Source of the DNA: Salpingoeca rosetta
Taxonomy: Eukaryota > Protista > Choanoflagellata
Assembly (NCBI GenBank): GCA_033442325.1
Contig: JAWQFM010000010.1
Location: 1,484,019 to 1,548,018 of the forward strand
Direction of reading: 5' to 3'
DNA length: 64,000 nucleotides
The notes below the pieces were generated by a model. That model was not told where the DNA came from. It was given only the letters and a program-made list of their open reading frames with translations, and searched no databases. A program made the translations under genes and the position numbers. Below, one piece after another: positions 33,944-40,669 of the stretch; position 1 is the stretch's first letter, and every line of letters starts with the position of its first letter.

Positions 33944-36073
33944 TCACTCGCTCACCACCGCTGCCTTCTCCTTCTTGACCTTCTTGTCCTTCTTCTTCTT
34001 GTCCTTCTTGTCCTTCCTCGCCTTGCCTTCGATCTTCCCCTCCTTCGGCCCATCGTCCATCGTCATCTTTGCCTTCTTGGCCGCGTGCTCGCCAGCATCT
34101 CCAGTACCGCCAGCATCTGCTGCCTCCACCTCTCTCTTTTCACCATGCCCCCTACCCCTACCTCTGCCCCTACCTCTGCCCCTACCTCTGCCACCACGGC
34201 CACCACGGCCACCACGGCCACGACCACGCTTTGCTGCCTCTGTTCGTTCTGCAACAATCTCCTCCGCTTCCATCAGCACATCCGTGCTTGGCTGCACGCG
34301 CATCTTGTACTGCGCAGGCTTCATAAACACCAGCGTCTGTGTGTGTGTGTGTGTGCGTGTGTGTGGTAAGCGTGTGTGAATGAGTGTGTGTCGTTGGTGT
34401 GTGTGTGTGTGTTGTTGTTGTTGTTGTTGGTGTGTGTCGTTGGTGTGTGTGTATAGTGTACGTGAAGGTGTGAATGAGTGAGAAAGTGCAGGTGTGTGAA
34501 CGAGATTGTGTAGATAGTCTGTAGATCGTGTAAGAGCCAGTTTATCAAACAGAGACTCGAATCCTGGGATGCTCCCCATCACCTCACGTCCATCAGCAAG
34601 CACAAGCCCTTCCCTCCCCCAACACACGCACACACACACACACACACCTTGCATCTGGCTGCCGCCTTGTCGGACTCTGCGTCAAACTCCTTTGCCTCTG
34701 CCAGCGTCGTCTTGTGGCGGTACCCTGGGAAGAGCTGGGCGTTGAAGTCGAGCATGCCTGCCAGCACCAGGCCGGCCTCTTTCCCAAGCGCAGGAATGTC
34801 CCAGCCGCTGTAGGGGAGGCTGCATACGAAGGACGCAAGGGGCACGCGCGGGGAGAGATGAGGCTGAGATGTCCACGCGTCTGAAAAGCACAAAGCCTAC
34901 GGTTTCTCTCTCACACACGTACACACTCACACACACGCATGCACAGTGCATGCGAACGAACCCTGACCCTCACAATCGCGCGCACACACACACACACACA
35001 CACACGCACACACACATCTTCACGCACACACACACGCACACACACACACACGCACACGCACACACACACGCACACACACACACACATCTTCACGCACGCA
35101 CGCACCTCATTTTGATGGTGATGTGAACTTGGCCGTTGGGATGGAGGACAAACGGGGATGAGAAGAGGAAGCGACGAACCAGCTCTTTGTTCAGATGCAC
35201 ACGCTGCTCCCCCGTGTGCGGGAAGTTGAACACAACGCGATGGAAGTACTCGCGCTGCTTTGGAAAGTGGTTGTGCAAGTTGCCGGCATCGATGTCGTGT
35301 ACGACCTGCGCTCCGCCGCGCTTGATCGCGCCAATGTTGCGCTTGCTGGCCTTGTACTTCTTCTCCACCTCCTCCAGGCTGTCATAGGAGGTGGCGACGA
35401 GGCGATCGGCGTGGCCGCCAACATGCTCCACCAAGCCCGCAGAGAAGCTGAAATCGCCATCGCCCACAACCAGGATGCGGTGCGTGCTCTTGTACTTGAC
35501 ATCCGCCGTTGCCCTCTCCCGATCCTCCCCGGCTGTGGGCTTGGGCGATTTCTCGGGCCGCTTTCCTTCGCGGGTCTGCTTTGTTCTCCCAGCCGGTGGT
35601 GCATATTCCACTTGATGGTCTGCGCGTCCTCCGCGTCCTCCGCGTCCTCCGCGTCCTCCGCGTCCTGGCCCACGACCACGGCCACGACCACGGCCACGAC
35701 CACGGCCACGGCCACCCCTGTCACCACCTCGACCTCCCCTGAATCCACTTCCTCGATCACCGCCTTCTTCTCTACCACCCCTGAACCCTCCTCCCCTGCC
35801 ACCACCACCACCACCACGACCACCCGTGAATCCTCCTCTGCCACCACCACGACCACCACGACCACCCCTGAATCCTCCTCGGCCACCACCACCACGACCG
35901 CCACCTCTGCCACCACCACCACGACCACCCCTGAATCCACCCCGGCCACGACCACCACCCCGGCCACGACCACCACCACGACCACCACGACCTCCTCTGC
36001 CACCGCGCACCAACATCATGTCTCGTGTGTTCGGCCACGAGGGTTGCGGAAAATTTGCAATGATTCCCGACAT
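33944..36073 (-). CDS. BMT5: BMT5-like (DUF2431) 25S rRNA uridine-N3 methyltransferase with long RGG N-terminus and Lys-rich tail
   Basis: [41 protein letters not shown]...FL.S..VL...[29 protein letters not shown]; GAR domain N-terminal. Confidence 0.85.
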
Positions 36074-36267
36074 ATCACCGAATTACATCATGGCAGTGGC
36101 GTTGGGCCAAGAAGGACAAGCAACTCACATCGAAGAGAGAACACAAACCAAGCTAACGTTGTTGCTTGCTTGCTTCATCATCATTCACACCTCCTTGACT
36201 TGCTTCACCGACTGAGCGGTGCCTGCGAACGACAGACGATCAAGGTAGAAGACGGCAGCGAGAACAC
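36074..36267. promoter_or_regulatory. Putative bidirectional promoter (~195 bp) between the BMT5-like and hydrogenase genes
   Basis: Divergent ATGs at 36073 (-) and 36268 (+). Inferred from geometry. Confidence 0.5.
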
Positions 36268-38594
36268 ATGATGGTGGTGGCTGCTACGGTGCGAGGCGTG
36301 TTGCGCCGCGCCGCTGCAACGCGACAAACAGCAGCGATCCCTCCACAGCCATCGATCGTGGCCACTGGCATGCTTCAGGCACAGCGACATGGATTCGCAA
36401 CATCATCGTCCACCGCATCGAAAGACAACAGTACCACCACAACTACTGCAACTGCTACAACCAGTGCTGCTGCTGCGACAGCTGCTGCCGCTGCTGCGAC
36501 AGCTGAGAAACCAGTGTCTGTCACCATCAACGGCAAGCCGTGCCAGGCATCGCTGGGCCAAACGATCCTTGAGGTTGCTCGCGACAACAACCTGTTCATC
36601 CCCACCCTGTGCTACCACCCCTCCCTCAAGCCCGTCGGGACGTGCCGCCTCTGCCTTGTGGACGTCGGCGGCAAGAAGACGGTAGGTTCGGAGGAAGATG
36701 AGAAGGGTCACGCACGTGTGCCAACAAGCGCCGCTGTGCGATGGCGTCCCCTGCCGCTGTTGGATGTTAGTTGGGTTGGTGCTGCTGCTGCTGCTGTTGC
36801 TGCTGCTGCGATCTCTGCCTCATATGTCGTTGTGACAATGGCGATGCATGCATGCTTGCACAGGTTCCCGCGTGCGTGACTGGTGTTCAGGACGGGATGA
36901 ATGTGCTCACGCACACAAAGGAGATTGAGGACGAGGTGCAGACCCTGCTTGCTCTTCTGCGTGCCAGGCACCCCATGAAGTGTGCAACTTGCCCCGTCAA
37001 CGGCCAATGCGAATTCCAGGTATGGTGTGTATGTGTGTGTATGTGTGTGTATGTGTGTGTATGTGTGTGTATGTGTGTATGTGTGTGTATGTGTGTATGT
37101 GTGTATGTGCGTGTGTGTGCACGATGTGTGTGTATGTGCGTGTGTGTACACGATGTGTGTGTGCACGATGTGTGTGTGTGTACGCGATATGTGCTTACAT
37201 GTTTGTGTACATACATGCGTGCGTCTGCGTTCTGCCAGGATCTGCTGATGCGGTATCAGGTGGAGGAGCCCGCTTTCTTTGGCCATGAGGACCGCAAGTC
37301 CGCTGTTGGCCGCACGCACGATCACTCCTCCCCCGCCATCCAACTCGACCTTGACAAGTGCGTGCTGTGCACACGCTGCGTGCGCGCTTGCCAGGAGATT
37401 CAGGGCATGAGCATTCTTGGCATTGCGTCGCGTGGGCCATACGAGTCCGTGTCACCTATCATGGGCAAGGAAATTGCAGACACGCCCTGCATCAGCTGCG
37501 GTGCGTGCACGGCCGTGTGTCCCGTCGGCGCCATCACAGAGGTGCCGCACCTCTTCAAGGTACTCCATCTGCTGGAGGGCGACTTCACACACGAGGACCT
37601 GACACGCGACGAGATCACGCGGCTTGGCGGCATGCCCACCGTGCGCCACCACCTCACGCGTGCGCGCCAGGTCAAGACCATGGGGGACGTGTGCGGTGCA
37701 CAGCAGGCCAAGGCCGGCATCAAGGTGGAGGAACAGTCACCATCGTCACCACAATCCACGTCAGCAGCACCATCAACAAAGCAGCCATCAGCAAGCAACA
37801 CCACGTCCGCAGCTCCAGAGACGAGCAAGAGCCGACTGCGCCGACCCATCACTATTGTGCACACTGCGCCTGCTGTGCGCGTGACCCTTGGTGAAGCCTT
37901 TGGCATGGAGCCTGGCAGCATCTCCACGGGCAAGCTGGTCAGCGCCCTTCGCGCCGTGGGCTTTGACTACGTCTTTGACACTAACGTGAGTCGTCGGTGT
38001 ACGTGTATGCTTGTATGTATGCATGCTTGTTTGTGAATGTGTAGGTGAATGTGTGTGTGTGTGTGTGGATGTGTAGGTGAATGTATGTGTGTAGGTGAAT
38101 GTGTGTATGCGTGTGTGTGGATGTGTAGGTGTCTGTGTGGTGATGGTTTTCATGTTTGGCGTGTGATTTTGAGCACGCTTGCGTGTGTATGTGTGTGTGT
38201 GTATCTGTTGTGACATACGTTGGTTGGGGCATCGATTGGGTGTGTGTGGTTGGGCAACTTCAACACGTTTCAACACACGTTACGTTTGGGCCCAATTTTG
38301 AAAACGGTTCCAAACGGTTGGGGATCGACCCCGCGGTGTTGCTTCTGACGCACCCAAATCAAGTGACACGTCATCGCTGATGCTCATGTGTGTCCTCGTC
38401 CGTGCTTGTTGTCGTCGTTCTTGTTGGTTATGGCGTTGTTGTTATGTTGTTGTTGGTGGTGCTGGATGGTGCGTGATGTCTCGGACAGTTTACGGCAGAT
38501 TTGACGATTATGGAGGAAGGCACCGAGCTGCTTGAACGCGTGCGCACGGGAGGCGTCTTCCCCATGATGACCAGCTGCTGCCCAGGATGGATCA
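36268..38594 (+). CDS. hydA: [FeFe]-hydrogenase (long CpI-like type with 2Fe-2S, His-ligated 4Fe-4S and 2x4Fe-4S F-domain); 5' four exons, 3' part lost in gap
   Basis: Exons 36268-36681, 36864-37019, 37239-37985, 38489-38594. IPTLCYHP...[11 protein letters not shown] (2Fe-2S); [14 protein letters not shown] (His/Cys3); [11 protein letters not shown] and [12 protein letters not shown]; [42 protein letters not shown]; H-cluster L1 motif TSCCPGW (38570-38590). Confidence 0.95.
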
Positions 38595-38726
38595 GTGAGT
38601 GCCAACACCTTAGCGTTGTGTGATGAGATTTCTGTCCTTTGTAGCTTTCGCTCCTACTTTCTGTTGCCTCTCGCTTCGTGTGTGAGCACCCTTACTCACA
38701 CACACACACTCTCTCTCTCTCACAAC

Positions 38727-38910
38727 CACTCACTCACTCACTCACTCACTCACTCACTCACTCACTCACTCACTCACTCACTCACTCACTCACTCACTCA
38801 CTCACTCACTCACTCATTCACTCACTCACTCACTCACTCACTCACTCACTCACTCACTCACTCACTCACTCACTCACTCACTCATTCACTCACTCACTCA
38901 CTCACTCACC
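38727..38910 (+). repeat. (CACT)n microsatellite running into an assembly gap
   Basis: Direct inspection; intron 4 of the hydrogenase. Confidence 0.95.
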
Positions 38911-39587
38911 NNNNNNNNNNNNNNNNNNNNNNNNNNNNNNNNNNNNNNNNNNNNNNNNNNNNNNNNNNNNNNNNNNNNNNNNNNNNNNNNNNNNNNNNNN
39001 NNNNNNNNNNNNNNNNNNNNNNNNNNNNNNNNNNNNNNNNNNNNNNNNNNNNNNNNNNNNNNNNNNNNNNNNNNNNNNNNNNNNNNNNNNNNNNNNNNNN
39101 NNNNNNNNNNNNNNNNNNNNNNNNNNNNNNNNNNNNNNNNNNNNNNNNNNNNNNNNNNNNNNNNNNNNNNNNNNNNNNNNNNNNNNNNNNNNNNNNNNNN
39201 NNNNNNNNNNNNNNNNNNNNNNNNNNNNNNNNNNNNNNNNNNNNNNNNNNNNNNNNNNNNNNNNNNNNNNNNNNNNNNNNNNNNNNNNNNNNNNNNNNNN
39301 NNNNNNNNNNNNNNNNNNNNNNNNNNNNNNNNNNNNNNNNNNNNNNNNNNNNNNNNNNNNNNNNNNNNNNNNNNNNNNNNNNNNNNNNNNNNNNNNNNNN
39401 NNNNNNNNNNNNNNNNNNNNNNNNNNNNNNNNNNNNNNNNNNNNNNNNNNNNNNNNNNNNNNNNNNNNNNNNNNNNNNNNNNNNNNNNNNNNNNNNNNNN
39501 NNNNNNNNNNNNNNNNNNNNNNNNNNNNNNNNNNNNNNNNNNNNNNNNNNNNNNNNNNNNNNNNNNNNNNNNNNNNNNNNNNNNNNN
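38911..39587. other. Assembly gap (677 N)
   Basis: Run of n. Confidence 1.
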
Positions 39588-39853
39588 CCCGTGTAGGTTG
39601 TGCCGTCGGGGATGTCGCCAAAGACATCGCCGGCAATGAGGAGCTCGTTCCACGCAGCAAACTAGCAGCAGTGGTGGTTGTGGTTGTGGTTGTGGTTGGA
39701 GGGTGATTTAAGAGGGGGAAGGGGGAAGGGCGAAATAAGGGAGTGAGGGTCGACGAGGCAAAAAGAGGATTAAAGCTGTCGAGACGAAGCGGCGAGTCGC
39801 ACACACGACACACATGTACAGCCTCAAAAGTGTATACTCGCAACCCTTCCTCC

Positions 39854-39855
<2 letters not shown>
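39588..39855. repeat. Apparently identical direct duplicate of 40319-40586 (last exon plus part of last intron of the PIN-like gene)
   Basis: Same sequence at 731-bp offset, each copy followed by (CA)n; starts exactly at the gap edge. Confidence 0.9.
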
Positions 39856-39927
<72 letters not shown>

Positions 39928-40314: not shown

Positions 40315-40584
40315 TTAACCCGTGTAGGTTGTGCCGTCGGGGATGTCGCCAAAGACATCGCCGGCAATGAGGAGCTCGTTCCACGCAGCAAACTAGCAGC
40401 AGTGGTGGTTGTGGTTGTGGTTGTGGTTGGAGGGTGATTTAAGAGGGGGAAGGGGGAAGGGCGAAATAAGGGAGTGAGGGTCGACGAGGCAAAAAGAGGA
40501 TTAAAGCTGTCGAGACGAAGCGGCGAGTCGCACACACGACACACATGTACAGCCTCAAAAGTGTATACTCGCAACCCTTCCTCC

Positions 40585-40669
<85 letters not shown>

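What the first reader, a model, noticed from the sequence alone, without database searches (positions are those of the whole stretch)
36268..38594. Intron-containing [FeFe]-hydrogenase with a mitochondrial-type presequence
Seen: the complete clostridial CpI-type F-domain (2Fe-2S, His-ligated 4Fe-4S, two 4Fe-4S) and the L1 motif TSCCPGW. The double Cys includes the proton-transfer Cys and separates it from Nar1/NARF (SxCPGW) and from complex I NDUFS1, which has no H-domain. The N-terminus [20 protein letters not shown]...[10 protein letters not shown] is Arg/Ala/Ser-rich, has no acidic residue for ~50 aa and has an R-x-x-F-A-T cleavage-like site. Microsatellite introns show it is a genuine nuclear gene, not contamination. 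Inference: hydrogen-producing, facultatively anaerobic mitochondria in an organism whose neighbouring genes are ordinary aerobic-eukaryote genes. Hydrogenases have been reported in some aerobic protists, so presence alone may not be new.
Basis: partly seen in the sequence, partly recalled or inferred. Interest (0 to 1): 0.75.

Follow-up and report, generated by a model that had tools for sequence, protein, structure and literature searches.

The report
Choanoflagellate [FeFe]-hydrogenase gene cut by gap
A real, transcribed gene of the choanoflagellate Salpingoeca rosetta, a close unicellular relative of animals, encodes a clostridial-type hydrogen-making enzyme with a mitochondrial-looking address tag; its last exon is lost in an assembly gap, and the helper genes that normally activate such enzymes were not found.

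Summary
Window 36268-38594 carries exons 1-4 of a nuclear hydA gene of Salpingoeca rosetta. It is deposited as XP_004994885.1, mis-named "Ferredoxin:4Fe-4S ferredoxin" and truncated. All 16 F-cluster ligands, the TSCCPGW motif and the Glu/Glu/Arg proton path are present.

Contigs of two runs that are probably RNA show the four exons spliced. They also show the transcript running about 980 nt past 38594, starting ...GWI|NMVEKTYPEL. That sequence occurs nowhere in the assembly, so the last exon lies in the N gap at 38910-39587.

Full-length orthologues exist in Microstomoeca roanoka, Barroeca monosierra, Salpingoeca infusionum and an uncultured marine relative. All keep L2 (MPCTAKKDE) and L3 (ELMACxGGCIGGxGNP). 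dN/dS against the marine relative is about 0.11. The choanoflagellate sequences form one clade inside the eukaryotic HydA group.

Three orthologues share an acid-free N-terminal extension with net charge +4 (M. roanoka +2), which fits a presequence. No predictor was run, and Naegleria shows that such predictions can fail.

Against "hydrogen-producing mitochondria": no HydE, HydF or HydG, no canonical PFO and no extra NuoE/F copy was found in the assembly, while a LipA control search worked.

Verdict: a new member of a known kind. The hydrogenase is genuine. Its localisation, activation and electron donor remain open. The scan's other note on this stretch is the same first reading.

The parts
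36161..36267 (+). 5' untranslated region. The first AUG of the transcript is at 36268.
   Evidence: Spliced RNA-like contigs begin at 36161 (X17) and 36198 (X18). No ATG lies between 36161 and 36268 in the sequence.
36268..36681 (+). Exon 1: an 80-aa N-terminal extension, then the first part of the 2Fe-2S (Fer2) domain with C115, C126 and C129.
   Evidence: Translation; Pfam Fer2_4 at 4.6e-13; spliced contig joint 36680>36863, GT..AG.
36268..36507 (+). Presequence-like extension (aa 1-80). Aa 1-52 are basic and free of acidic residues (5 Arg + 1 Lys; net +4 over the first 25 aa). A Thr/Ala-rich spacer follows.
   Evidence: Bacterial HydA starts directly at the Fer2 domain. Comparable extensions occur in Barroeca, S. 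infusionum and M. roanoka.
36682..36863 (+). Intron 1 (GT..AG), containing a (TGC)n run.
36864..37019 (+). Exon 2: the last 2Fe-2S ligand (C142) and the His-ligated 4Fe-4S cluster (H174, C178, C181, C187).
   Evidence: Pfam NADH-G_4Fe-4S_3 at 4e-8.
37020..37238 (+). Intron 2, a GT-rich microsatellite.
   Evidence: In contig record 16, exon 2 and exon 3 are contiguous (record positions 781/782).
37239..37985 (+). Exon 3: the two ferredoxin-type 4Fe-4S clusters, a lineage-specific insert, and the start of the H-domain (TAPAVRV ... FDTN).
   Evidence: Pfam Fer4_Nqo3 and Fe_hyd_lg_C positions 3-46.
37569..37844 (+). Insert between the F-domain and the H-domain (aa 301-392), specific to the S. rosetta / Barroeca / Microstomoeca / marine-relative group. 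It has a conserved 42-aa part (37569-37694) and a variable low-complexity linker.
   Evidence: Alignments; coordinates. In the AF2 model of the Barroeca orthologue the conserved part forms helices at moderate confidence and the linker is disordered.
37986..38488 (+). Intron 3 (GT..AG), GT-rich repeats.
   Evidence: Joint 37985>38489 in X17 and X18.
38489..38594 (+). Exon 4 (phase 1 at its end): proton-path residues E449/E452/R456 and the L1 motif TSCCPGW (C469 is the proton-transfer Cys; C470 is the [4Fe-4S]H ligand).
   Evidence: Pfam Fe_hyd_lg_C positions 47-81 at 4e-11; near-invariant columns.
38595..38909 (+). 5' part of intron 4, ending in an (ACTC)54 microsatellite that runs into the gap.
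   Evidence: The RNA contigs leave the reference exactly at 38594.
38910..39587 (.). Assembly gap (678 N). It must hold the rest of intron 4 and the last exon, which is about 960 nt in the marine relative.
   Evidence: The RNA contig continues 980 nt beyond 38594. Its first 30 nt are absent from the whole assembly at up to 3 mismatches. They match the start of exon 5 in the marine relative at 28/30, directly after an AG acceptor.
39588..39887 (.). Exact copy of 40319-40618 (the 3' flank of the convergent PIN-like gene), directly after the gap. It is a sign of mis-assembly or local duplication and is not part of hydA.

Best explanation
Window 36268-38594 is the 5' two-thirds (exons 1-4) of the single hydA gene of Salpingoeca rosetta.

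Shown:
- The gene is nuclear, spliced and transcribed.
- It encodes the complete accessory-cluster domain of an M3 (CpI-type) group A [FeFe]-hydrogenase and the start of the catalytic H-domain.
- The mRNA continues into more H-domain sequence that the assembly has lost in the gap at 38910-39587. This is why the deposited protein is a 483-aa 'ferredoxin'.

Inferred, with high confidence: the full protein is about 790 aa and has an intact H-cluster site, as in its four choanoflagellate orthologues.

Inferred, with moderate confidence: the basic, acid-free N-terminal extension imports the protein into the mitochondrion. There, at low oxygen, electrons from a low-potential donor pass along the 2Fe-2S and three 4Fe-4S clusters to the H-cluster. 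Protons arrive through R456/E452/(Ser)/E449/C469 and are reduced to H2, disposing of excess reducing power.

The donor and the H-cluster maturation route are unknown, because neither PFO nor HydE/F/G could be found.

My odds: genuine full-length hydrogenase gene 0.9; catalytically active in vivo about 0.6; mitochondrial given active about 0.7.
For: Identity:
- Pfam exon by exon; all cluster ligands and L1 present.
- PDB sequence matches at 4e-70 to the HydA of A. woodii HydABC and 7e-56 to CpI.
- The AF2 model of the Barroeca orthologue (pLDDT 83) superposes on T. kivui HydA and on CpI with target-normalised TM 0.90-0.92.

Nuclear and expressed:
- GT..AG introns and spliced contigs exon 1-2-3-4 in two runs from different studies.
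- Synteny hydA -> PIN-like gene is shared with the marine relative.

Continuation of the transcript:
- 1086/1087-nt contigs extend 980 nt beyond 38594 and start ACATGG..., which reads GWI|NMVEKTYPEL.
- That 30-mer is absent from the assembly.
- H-domain models and the S. infusionum C-terminal half find only this locus and the Nar1 gene.

Intact catalytic half in relatives:
- L2 MPCTAKKDE, L3 E(L/M)MACxGGCIGG(A/G)GNP and the proton-path serine are present in S. infusionum, Barroeca, M. roanoka and the marine relative.

Selection and origin:
- dN/dS is 0.11 against the marine relative over 231 codons.
- Choanoflagellates are monophyletic (SH-aLRT 98) and sit inside the eukaryotic HydA clade. The gene is therefore an old resident and was not recently captured from bacteria.

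Targeting:
- Extensions of 26-90 aa relative to bacterial HydA. They are acid-free, with net +4 over the first 25 aa in three species and +2 in M. roanoka. Canonical R-3 motifs occur in Barroeca (RYLS) and S. infusionum (RVFA).
- The N-terminus is disordered in the AF2 model.
Against: - No HydE, HydG, HydF-specific domain or BATS domain in the 55.4-Mb assembly. The best 'HydF' hit is a Lipase_3+GTPase ORF. A LipA control was detected over four exons.
- No canonical PFO/PNO. The only hit is POR_N + flavodoxin + NIR_SIR.
- Only one NDUFV1 locus and one NDUFV2 locus, so there is no dedicated HydB/C-like partner.
- S. rosetta's own L2 and L3 were not seen. Only 10 codons beyond exon 4 are documented.
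- No targeting predictor was run. S. rosetta has no canonical R-3 site.
- A predicted mitochondrial hydrogenase in Naegleria was cytosolic (PMC4007538).
- The RNA label of runs X17 and X18 is a guess by the tool, although spliced contigs can only come from RNA or cDNA.
Confidence: 0.55

Rival explanations
1. An orphan HydA without the [2Fe] subcluster. The protein is made and kept under selection. Because the lineage has no HydE/F/G, it carries only its 4Fe-4S and 2Fe-2S clusters and acts as an electron-transfer, redox-sensing or other non-H2 iron-sulfur protein. In that case it would be a mitochondrial counterpart of what Nar1 became in the cytosol.
For: Maturase models find nothing, although the LipA control works. 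No PFO. The gene appears well covered in ordinary culture RNA, which is unusual for an anaerobic enzyme, though contig depth is a poor measure of expression.
Against: Every residue specific to holding and serving the [2Fe] subcluster is conserved in all orthologues: the proton-transfer Cys, the L2 Lys, both Met, the APAVR loop and the Glu/Ser/Glu/Arg path. Nar1 proteins lose these residues, and the S. rosetta Nar1 has SSCPGW. Part of hydA itself is missing from this assembly, so a gene's absence from the assembly does not prove its absence from the genome.
Confidence: 0.22
2. An active but cytosolic hydrogenase, as in Naegleria gruberi. The N-terminal extension would not be a working mitochondrial signal.
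For: In Naegleria, in-silico mitochondrial predictions were contradicted by fractionation and immunolocalisation (PMC4007538). The S. rosetta extension lacks a canonical R-3 or R-10 site and is followed by a long Thr/Ala spacer.
Against: Four choanoflagellate orthologues independently keep an acid-free, Arg-rich extension despite having almost no sequence similarity in it. That pattern is typical of presequences. Two of them carry canonical R-3 motifs.
Confidence: 0.15
3. A decaying relic, or a truly truncated 'ferredoxin' as annotated. On this reading the gene ends after exon 4 or is a pseudogene.
For: The deposited model is 483 aa and the assembly holds no further H-domain exon.
Against: The RNA contigs splice out of exon 4 exactly at the donor and continue in frame with H-domain sequence for about 980 nt. 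dN/dS is 0.11. Orthologues are full length.
Confidence: 0.03
4. Bacterial contamination, or a very recent bacterial transfer.
For: The best named bacterial hits are Thermotogae HydA at about 48% identity.
Against: Four spliceosomal introns that are spliced in RNA. Eukaryotic flanking genes and synteny conserved with a relative. The intron-4 position is shared with the marine relative. Placement is inside a eukaryotic clade.
Confidence: 0.01

Closest known systems
Clostridium pasteurianum CpI (M3-type group A [FeFe]-hydrogenase; PDB 1FEH, 4XDC)
   Same: Same domain order: 2Fe-2S, His-ligated 4Fe-4S, two 4Fe-4S, then the H-domain with a fused small-subunit-like tail. All cluster ligands, L1, and the residues equivalent to E279/E282/R286 are present. 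Sequence E-value 7e-56. The orthologue model superposes with TM 0.90-0.92.
   Different: Eukaryotic and intron-split. It has an N-terminal extension of 26-90 aa, an insert of about 90 aa between the F- and H-domains, and a C-terminal tail of about 40 aa in relatives. L3 ends GGAGNP in three orthologues. Activity is untested.
HydA of the electron-bifurcating HydABC complexes (A. woodii 7Q4V/7Q4W, T. kivui 8A6T) and the Thermotogae 'NADH-dependent group A6' HydA
   Same: These are the best solved-structure matches and the best named bacterial matches. The Thermotogae clade is next to the eukaryotic clade in the tree.
   Different: No dedicated HydB/HydC genes were found. The genome has only the single complex I NDUFV1 and NDUFV2 loci. 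Whether NADH can feed this enzyme is unknown.
HydA of 'aerobic' protists (Naegleria gruberi, Acanthamoeba castellanii)
   Same: A long-form HydA with an N-terminal extension, in an organism that has ordinary aerobic mitochondria. Acanthamoeba is predicted to target its HydA to mitochondria (PMC3785491). The same paper lists Salpingoeca in a eukaryotic ASCT clade.
   Different: Naegleria and Acanthamoeba encode HydE, HydF and HydG, and Acanthamoeba also encodes PFO (PMC3785491, PMC4007538). S. rosetta shows none of these in its assembly. The Naegleria enzyme is cytosolic (PMC4007538).
Nar1 / NARFL (CIAO3), the hydrogenase-like cytosolic Fe-S assembly factor
   Same: Homologous H-domain fold.
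   Different: S. rosetta has a separate Nar1-type gene at contig 11, about 279.5-283.6 kb, with SSCPGW, MPCFDKKLE and MACPKGCVNGGGQ and without the F-domain. The window gene has the CC pair and the full F-domain.
NDUFS1 / Nqo3 (75-kDa subunit of complex I)
   Same: The N-terminal Fer2 + His-4Fe-4S + Fer4 module is homologous (PDB hits at about 1e-30).
   Different: NDUFS1 has a molybdopterin-like C-terminal domain and no H-domain. Here exons 3-4 match Fe_hyd_lg_C.

Membership tests
Group A, M3-type [FeFe]-hydrogenase (HydA, CpI-like) | N-terminal 2Fe-2S plant-ferredoxin-like domain with four Cys ligands | tested here: met
   Fer2_4 at 4.6e-13; C115, C126, C129, C142.
Group A, M3-type [FeFe]-hydrogenase (HydA, CpI-like) | His-ligated 4Fe-4S cluster (H-x3-C-x2-C-x5-C) | tested here: met
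   NADH-G_4Fe-4S_3 at 4e-8; H174, C178, C181, C187, invariant in 60 sequences.
Group A, M3-type [FeFe]-hydrogenase (HydA, CpI-like) | Two ferredoxin-type 4Fe-4S clusters (2 x CxxCxxCxxxC) | tested here: met
   C231/234/237/241 and C274/277/280/284.
Group A, M3-type [FeFe]-hydrogenase (HydA, CpI-like) | L1 motif TSCCPxW, with the proton-transfer Cys and the first [4Fe-4S]H ligand | tested here: met
   TSCCPGW at aa 467-473, nt 38570-38590.
Group A, M3-type [FeFe]-hydrogenase (HydA, CpI-like) | Proton-transfer residues equivalent to CpI E279, E282 and R286 (and S319) | tested here: met
   E449, E452 and R456 in S. rosetta. The S319 equivalent lies in the missing exon and is present in all four orthologues.
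Group A, M3-type [FeFe]-hydrogenase (HydA, CpI-like) | L2 motif MPCxxKxxE | tested here: inconclusive
   Not in the assembly. The S. rosetta mRNA continues into the H-domain. MPCTAKKDE is present in S. infusionum, Barroeca, M. roanoka and the marine relative.
Group A, M3-type [FeFe]-hydrogenase (HydA, CpI-like) | L3 motif ExMACxxGCxxGxG | tested here: inconclusive
   The situation is as for L2. E(L/M)MAC(K/R/E)GGCIGG(A/G)GNP is present in the four orthologues.
Group A, M3-type [FeFe]-hydrogenase (HydA, CpI-like) | H2 evolution or uptake activity | not testable with these tools
   Needs an enzyme assay or gas measurement.
Complete eukaryotic hydrogenase system (HydA + HydE/F/G, with PFO and ferredoxin as donor) | Maturases HydE, HydF and HydG encoded in the genome | tested here: not met
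   TIGR03956 and TIGR03955 give no candidates. TIGR03918 gives only generic GTPase hits. PF18133 and PF06968 give none. The LipA control was found. Caveat: the assembly has gaps, and one of them swallows part of hydA itself.
Complete eukaryotic hydrogenase system (HydA + HydE/F/G, with PFO and ferredoxin as donor) | Pyruvate:ferredoxin oxidoreductase, or PNO | tested here: not met
   The only TIGR02176 hit is a 1947-aa ORF with POR_N + flavodoxin + NIR_SIR, i.e. a sulfite-reductase fusion.
Mitochondrial matrix protein with a cleavable presequence | N-terminal extension relative to prokaryotic homologues; positively charged, acid-free, rich in hydroxylated residues | tested here: met
   An 80-aa extension with the first acidic residue at 53 and net +4 over the first 25 aa. 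The same pattern holds in three orthologues.
Mitochondrial matrix protein with a cleavable presequence | Amphipathic helix and an MPP cleavage motif (R-2, R-3 or R-10), scored by a trained predictor | tested here: inconclusive
   Maximum hydrophobic moment 0.60 over an 11-aa window. S. rosetta has only R-2-like sites. R-3 motifs occur in Barroeca and S. infusionum. TargetP and MitoFates were not available.
Mitochondrial matrix protein with a cleavable presequence | Experimental localisation in mitochondria | not testable with these tools
   Naegleria shows that prediction and experiment can disagree (PMC4007538).
Nar1 / NARFL | A single Cys in L1 (SxCPGW), no CpI-type F-domain, and loss of the proton-path and [2Fe]-contact residues | tested here: not met
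   The window gene has CC and the full F-domain. The true Nar1 gene is on contig 11.

The most novel reading that the evidence does not exclude
The choanoflagellate clade containing S. rosetta keeps a fully competent, mitochondrion-targeted [FeFe]-hydrogenase that makes H2 although the lineage has no HydE/F/G. That would mean either an unknown, maturase-independent route to the [2Fe] subcluster, or a new physiological role for a conserved H-cluster pocket. The organism is genetically tractable and belongs to the sister group of animals.
Probability: 0.1. Interest if true: 0.85.

Novelty: new member of a known kind. Interest (0 to 1): 0.5.

Why it matters
Choanoflagellates are the closest living relatives of animals, and S. 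rosetta is their main laboratory model, with transfection and genome editing available. A conserved, expressed HydA in at least five choanoflagellate lineages extends hydrogenase-type anaerobic biochemistry to the animal stem neighbourhood. It bears on two debates: whether early holozoans were facultative anaerobes, and how patchily HydA is inherited among eukaryotes. Here the choanoflagellate clade is sister to red-algal HydA.

The apparent lack of maturases and of PFO makes it a clean test case for what a 'maturase-less' eukaryotic HydA does.

Practically, the public protein record is truncated and mis-named because of an assembly gap. Surveys based on annotation or on full-length matches will therefore miss it.

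Tried and rejected
1. Missing H-domain exons elsewhere in the assembly. PF02906 and the S. infusionum C-terminal half found only this locus and the Nar1 gene. The 30-mer that follows exon 4 in RNA is absent at up to 3 mismatches.

2. S. rosetta's own C-terminal half in the protein collection. The word search with the S. infusionum H-domain found only the marine relative and Barroeca. An exact 30-mer scan of JGI metagenomes found nothing. S. rosetta's own L2 and L3 therefore stay unseen.

3. The Tara contigs as a gap filler. Rejected: they are only 88% identical in the PIN-like gene and differ at 3 of 35 residues in exon 4, so they come from a different species.

4. The HydF hit on contig 25 as a possible HydEF fusion. 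Rejected: it is Lipase_3 + MMR_HSR1.

5. The PFO hit on contig 1 as PFO or PNO. Rejected: it is a sulfite-reductase fusion.

6. A second NuoF/NuoE pair as a HydB/C-like partner. None found.

7. Literature. Five searches that paired choanoflagellate, Salpingoeca or Monosiga with hydrogenase terms, plus a sixth with choanoflagellate and hydrogenase alone, found no paper describing a choanoflagellate HydA. The library lacks most subscription journals.

8. Not done:
Exons were searched by reference, and the joined sequence used is the deposited record P0001. In one search, aligned codon blocks of exons 3 and 4 were pooled only to sum substitution counts.
- The large representative-protein search was not needed.
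- Maturases in the other choanoflagellates could not be checked, because no query or genome was reachable.
Full report
**What is in the window**

The stretch 36268-38594 reads as four exons on the + strand: 36268-36681, 36864-37019, 37239-37985 and 38489-38594. All are bounded by GT..AG.

Pfam was searched exon by exon, by reference:
- Exon 1: Fer2_4.
- Exon 2: NADH-G_4Fe-4S_3, the His-ligated cluster.
- Exon 3: ferredoxin-type 4Fe-4S domains, plus Fe_hyd_lg_C positions 3-46.
- Exon 4: Fe_hyd_lg_C positions 47-81.

All ligands are present:
- 2Fe-2S: C115/C126/C129/C142.
- His-ligated cluster: H174/C178/C181/C187.
- The two ferredoxin-type clusters: C231/234/237/241 and C274/277/280/284.
- H-domain start: the APAVR loop, E449/E452/R456 (equivalent to CpI E279/E282/R286, by my knowledge of CpI numbering) and TSCCPGW at residues 467-473.

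Introns 2, 3 and 4 are microsatellite-rich.

**Organism and existing record**

A word search scored on exon 3, using an open frame given by reference, returned a 100% match. It is a 483-aa protein named 'Ferredoxin:4Fe-4S ferredoxin [Salpingoeca rosetta]', XP_004994885.1 / EGD83381.1 / UniRef F2U7G4.

That record equals my four exons plus nine residues read from intron 4. The sequence is thus public, but truncated and mis-named. Wherever a joined sequence was needed I used this deposited record.

**The gene is transcribed, spliced and longer than the assembly shows**

Logan contigs of two runs from different studies (X17, X18; labelled 'RNA?') contain one contig joining exons 1-2-3-4 exactly at my boundaries. 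A second contig of 1086/1087 nt covers exon 4 and then runs 980 nt further. It leaves the reference precisely at the donor (38594) with ACATGGTTGAGAAGACGTATCCTGAGCTGA. DNA-type runs show the unspliced locus.

In frame, the continuation reads ...CCPGWI|NMVEKTYPEL, which is genuine H-domain sequence. This 30-mer occurs nowhere in the 55.4-Mb assembly at up to 3 mismatches. H-domain profiles and the S. infusionum C-terminal half find no further exon.

The intron after exon 4 ends in an (ACTC)54 array that runs into 678 N (38910-39587). The first 300 nt after the gap are an exact copy of 40319-40618. The last exon is therefore lost in a badly assembled gap.

**Relatives**

Full-length orthologues exist in three cultured species:
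- Salpingoeca infusionum, 692 aa.
- Barroeca monosierra, 744 aa, 72% identical to S. rosetta residues 1-474.
- Microstomoeca roanoka, 775 aa.

An uncultured marine relative also has one. Its terminal exon of 319 codons is identical on at least 15 Tara and other marine metagenome contigs.

In that relative, hydA is followed by a convergent PIN-like (Mem_trans) gene, as in the window. The PIN-like gene is 88% identical in DNA. Exon 5 there starts directly after an AG, with 28/30 identity to the S. rosetta RNA continuation; both differences are synonymous.

All four orthologues carry L2 MPCTAKKDE, L3 E(L/M)MACxGGCIGG(A/G)GNP and the proton-path serine.

Over 231 alignable codons of exons 3-4, S. 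rosetta against the marine relative gives dN 0.145, dS about 1.3 (near saturation) and dN/dS about 0.11.

A quick IQ-TREE (PMSF) tree of 53 sequences gave these results:
- The choanoflagellates form one clade (SH-aLRT 98).
- That clade is sister to the red algae Timspurckia and Porphyridium (99).
- Both sit inside a group of eukaryotic HydAs (Corallochytrium, Nutomonas, Anaeramoeba, Hyaloraphidium and unnamed metagenomic sequences).
- That group lies next to a Thermotogae clade.

The tree lacks classical taxa such as Trichomonas, Chlamydomonas and Naegleria, is unrooted and comes from a short search. I use it only to exclude a recent bacterial origin.

**Structure**

By sequence, the closest solved chains are HydA of the bifurcating HydABC complexes (A. 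woodii 7Q4V, 4e-70; T. kivui 8A6T) and CpI (7e-56).

An AlphaFold2 model of the complete Barroeca orthologue has mean pLDDT 83 and pTM 0.82. It superposes on 8A6T and on CpI with target-normalised TM 0.90-0.92. Three regions have low confidence: the N-terminal 20 residues, the low-complexity linker and the C-terminal tail.

It lies between the last F-cluster and the H-domain at S. rosetta aa 301-392 (nt 37569-37844). Its first 42 residues are [42 protein letters not shown]. They are conserved in Barroeca, M. roanoka and the marine relative and are modelled as helices. The rest is variable, and is poly-Gln in the marine relative. Its role is unknown.

**Presequence**

Bacterial HydA begins at the Fer2 domain. 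The choanoflagellate proteins have the following extensions:

| Species | Extension | First acidic residue | Net charge, first 25 aa |
|---|---|---|---|
| S. rosetta | 80 aa | 53 | +4 |
| Barroeca | 26 aa | 37 | +4 |
| S. infusionum | 26 aa | 36 | +4 |
| M. roanoka | about 90 aa | 86 | +2 |

The extensions share almost no sequence with one another. That pattern is typical of targeting peptides.

Canonical R-3 motifs occur in Barroeca (RYLS) and S. infusionum (RVFA).

These are heuristics from my own script. No trained predictor was available. The Naegleria gruberi case shows that a hydrogenase predicted to be mitochondrial can be cytosolic (PMC4007538).

**The missing partners**

Six-frame profile searches of the whole assembly gave the following:
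- No candidate for HydE (TIGR03956), HydG (TIGR03955), the HydF tetramer domain (PF18133) or the BATS domain (PF06968).
- Only generic GTPase hits for HydF (TIGR03918). The best of these is a 1116-aa Lipase_3+GTPase ORF.
- The same procedure found the radical-SAM enzyme LipA over four exons, so sensitivity in this intron-rich genome is adequate.
- The only PFO-profile hit is an intronless 1947-aa ORF with POR_N, flavodoxin and NIR_SIR domains. It is a sulfite-reductase fusion and not a PFO or PNO.
- NDUFV1 and NDUFV2 are each at a single locus.

The caveat is that this same assembly has lost a third of hydA, so absence from the assembly is not absence from the genome.

**Interpretation**

Shown:
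- A genuine, expressed, selectively maintained nuclear hydA of the CpI (M3) type.
- It is a gene separate from Nar1, which lies on contig 11 with SSCPGW.

Inferred with high confidence: the full protein has an intact H-cluster pocket.

Inferred with moderate confidence: import into mitochondria and H2 evolution at low oxygen.

Unknown: the electron donor and how the [2Fe] subcluster would be made.

The main rival is an orphan HydA that never receives the [2Fe] subcluster and serves another redox role. Against it stands the complete conservation of residues that matter only for that subcluster and for proton delivery. A cytosolic active enzyme is the second rival. Pseudogene and contamination are excluded.

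**Known or new**

Long-form HydA with N-terminal extensions in otherwise aerobic protists is established for Naegleria and Acanthamoeba (PMC3785491, PMC4007538). The kind is therefore known.

Six full-text searches found no paper that describes a hydrogenase in any choanoflagellate (contexts checked). The one Salpingoeca mention in a hydrogenase paper concerns the ASCT tree. The library omits most subscription journals, so I cannot exclude a mention elsewhere.

I class it as a new member of a known kind with two unusual traits: the apparent lack of maturases and PFO, and the conserved insert.

Noticed in passing
G000 contig 1, about 96.9-102.7 kb, minus strand (L023:406-6246): An intronless 1947-aa open frame combines a PFO-like N-terminal TPP domain (POR_N), a flavodoxin domain and sulfite/nitrite-reductase hemoprotein domains (NIR_SIR_ferr + NIR_SIR). 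It looks like a single-chain assimilatory sulfite reductase with a PFO-derived module. An ORF this long without introns is unusual for this genome.
   Followed up: partly
window 39588-39887 and 40319-40618: A 300-nt exact direct repeat, 731 nt apart, begins immediately after the N gap. It duplicates the 3' flank of the PIN-like gene and is probably an assembly artefact around the missing hydA exon.
   Followed up: partly
G000 contig 11, about 279.5-283.6 kb, minus strand (L006): The Nar1/NARFL (CIAO3) orthologue of S. rosetta, with SSCPGW, MPCFDKKLE and MACPKGCVNGGGQ. It is the only other Fe_hyd_lg_C locus in the assembly.
   Followed up: partly
window 37569-37694 (aa 301-342 of the hydrogenase): A 42-residue segment is conserved in S. 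rosetta, Barroeca, Microstomoeca and the marine relative. It is absent from S. infusionum, other eukaryotic HydAs and bacterial HydAs. It is followed by a hypervariable low-complexity linker. It is modelled as helices and its function is unknown.
   Followed up: partly
G000 contig 25, about 214.2-217.5 kb, minus strand (L024:3198-6545): A 1116-aa open frame joins a class-3 lipase domain (residues 110-240) to an MMR_HSR1-type GTPase domain (residues 901-1005). It surfaced as a false HydF hit.
   Followed up: no
L012-L022 (Tara Oceans and other marine metagenome contigs): An uncultured marine choanoflagellate close to S. rosetta occurs in many ocean metagenomes. Its hydA terminal exon is identical in protein sequence on at least 15 contigs. 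The gene order hydA, PIN-like carrier, lipase-3 and aconitase is conserved there.
   Followed up: partly
window 35093-36073, minus strand: The divergent upstream neighbour encodes a BMT5-like rRNA (uridine-N3)-methyltransferase domain behind about 150 residues of RGG/GRG repeats.
   Followed up: no
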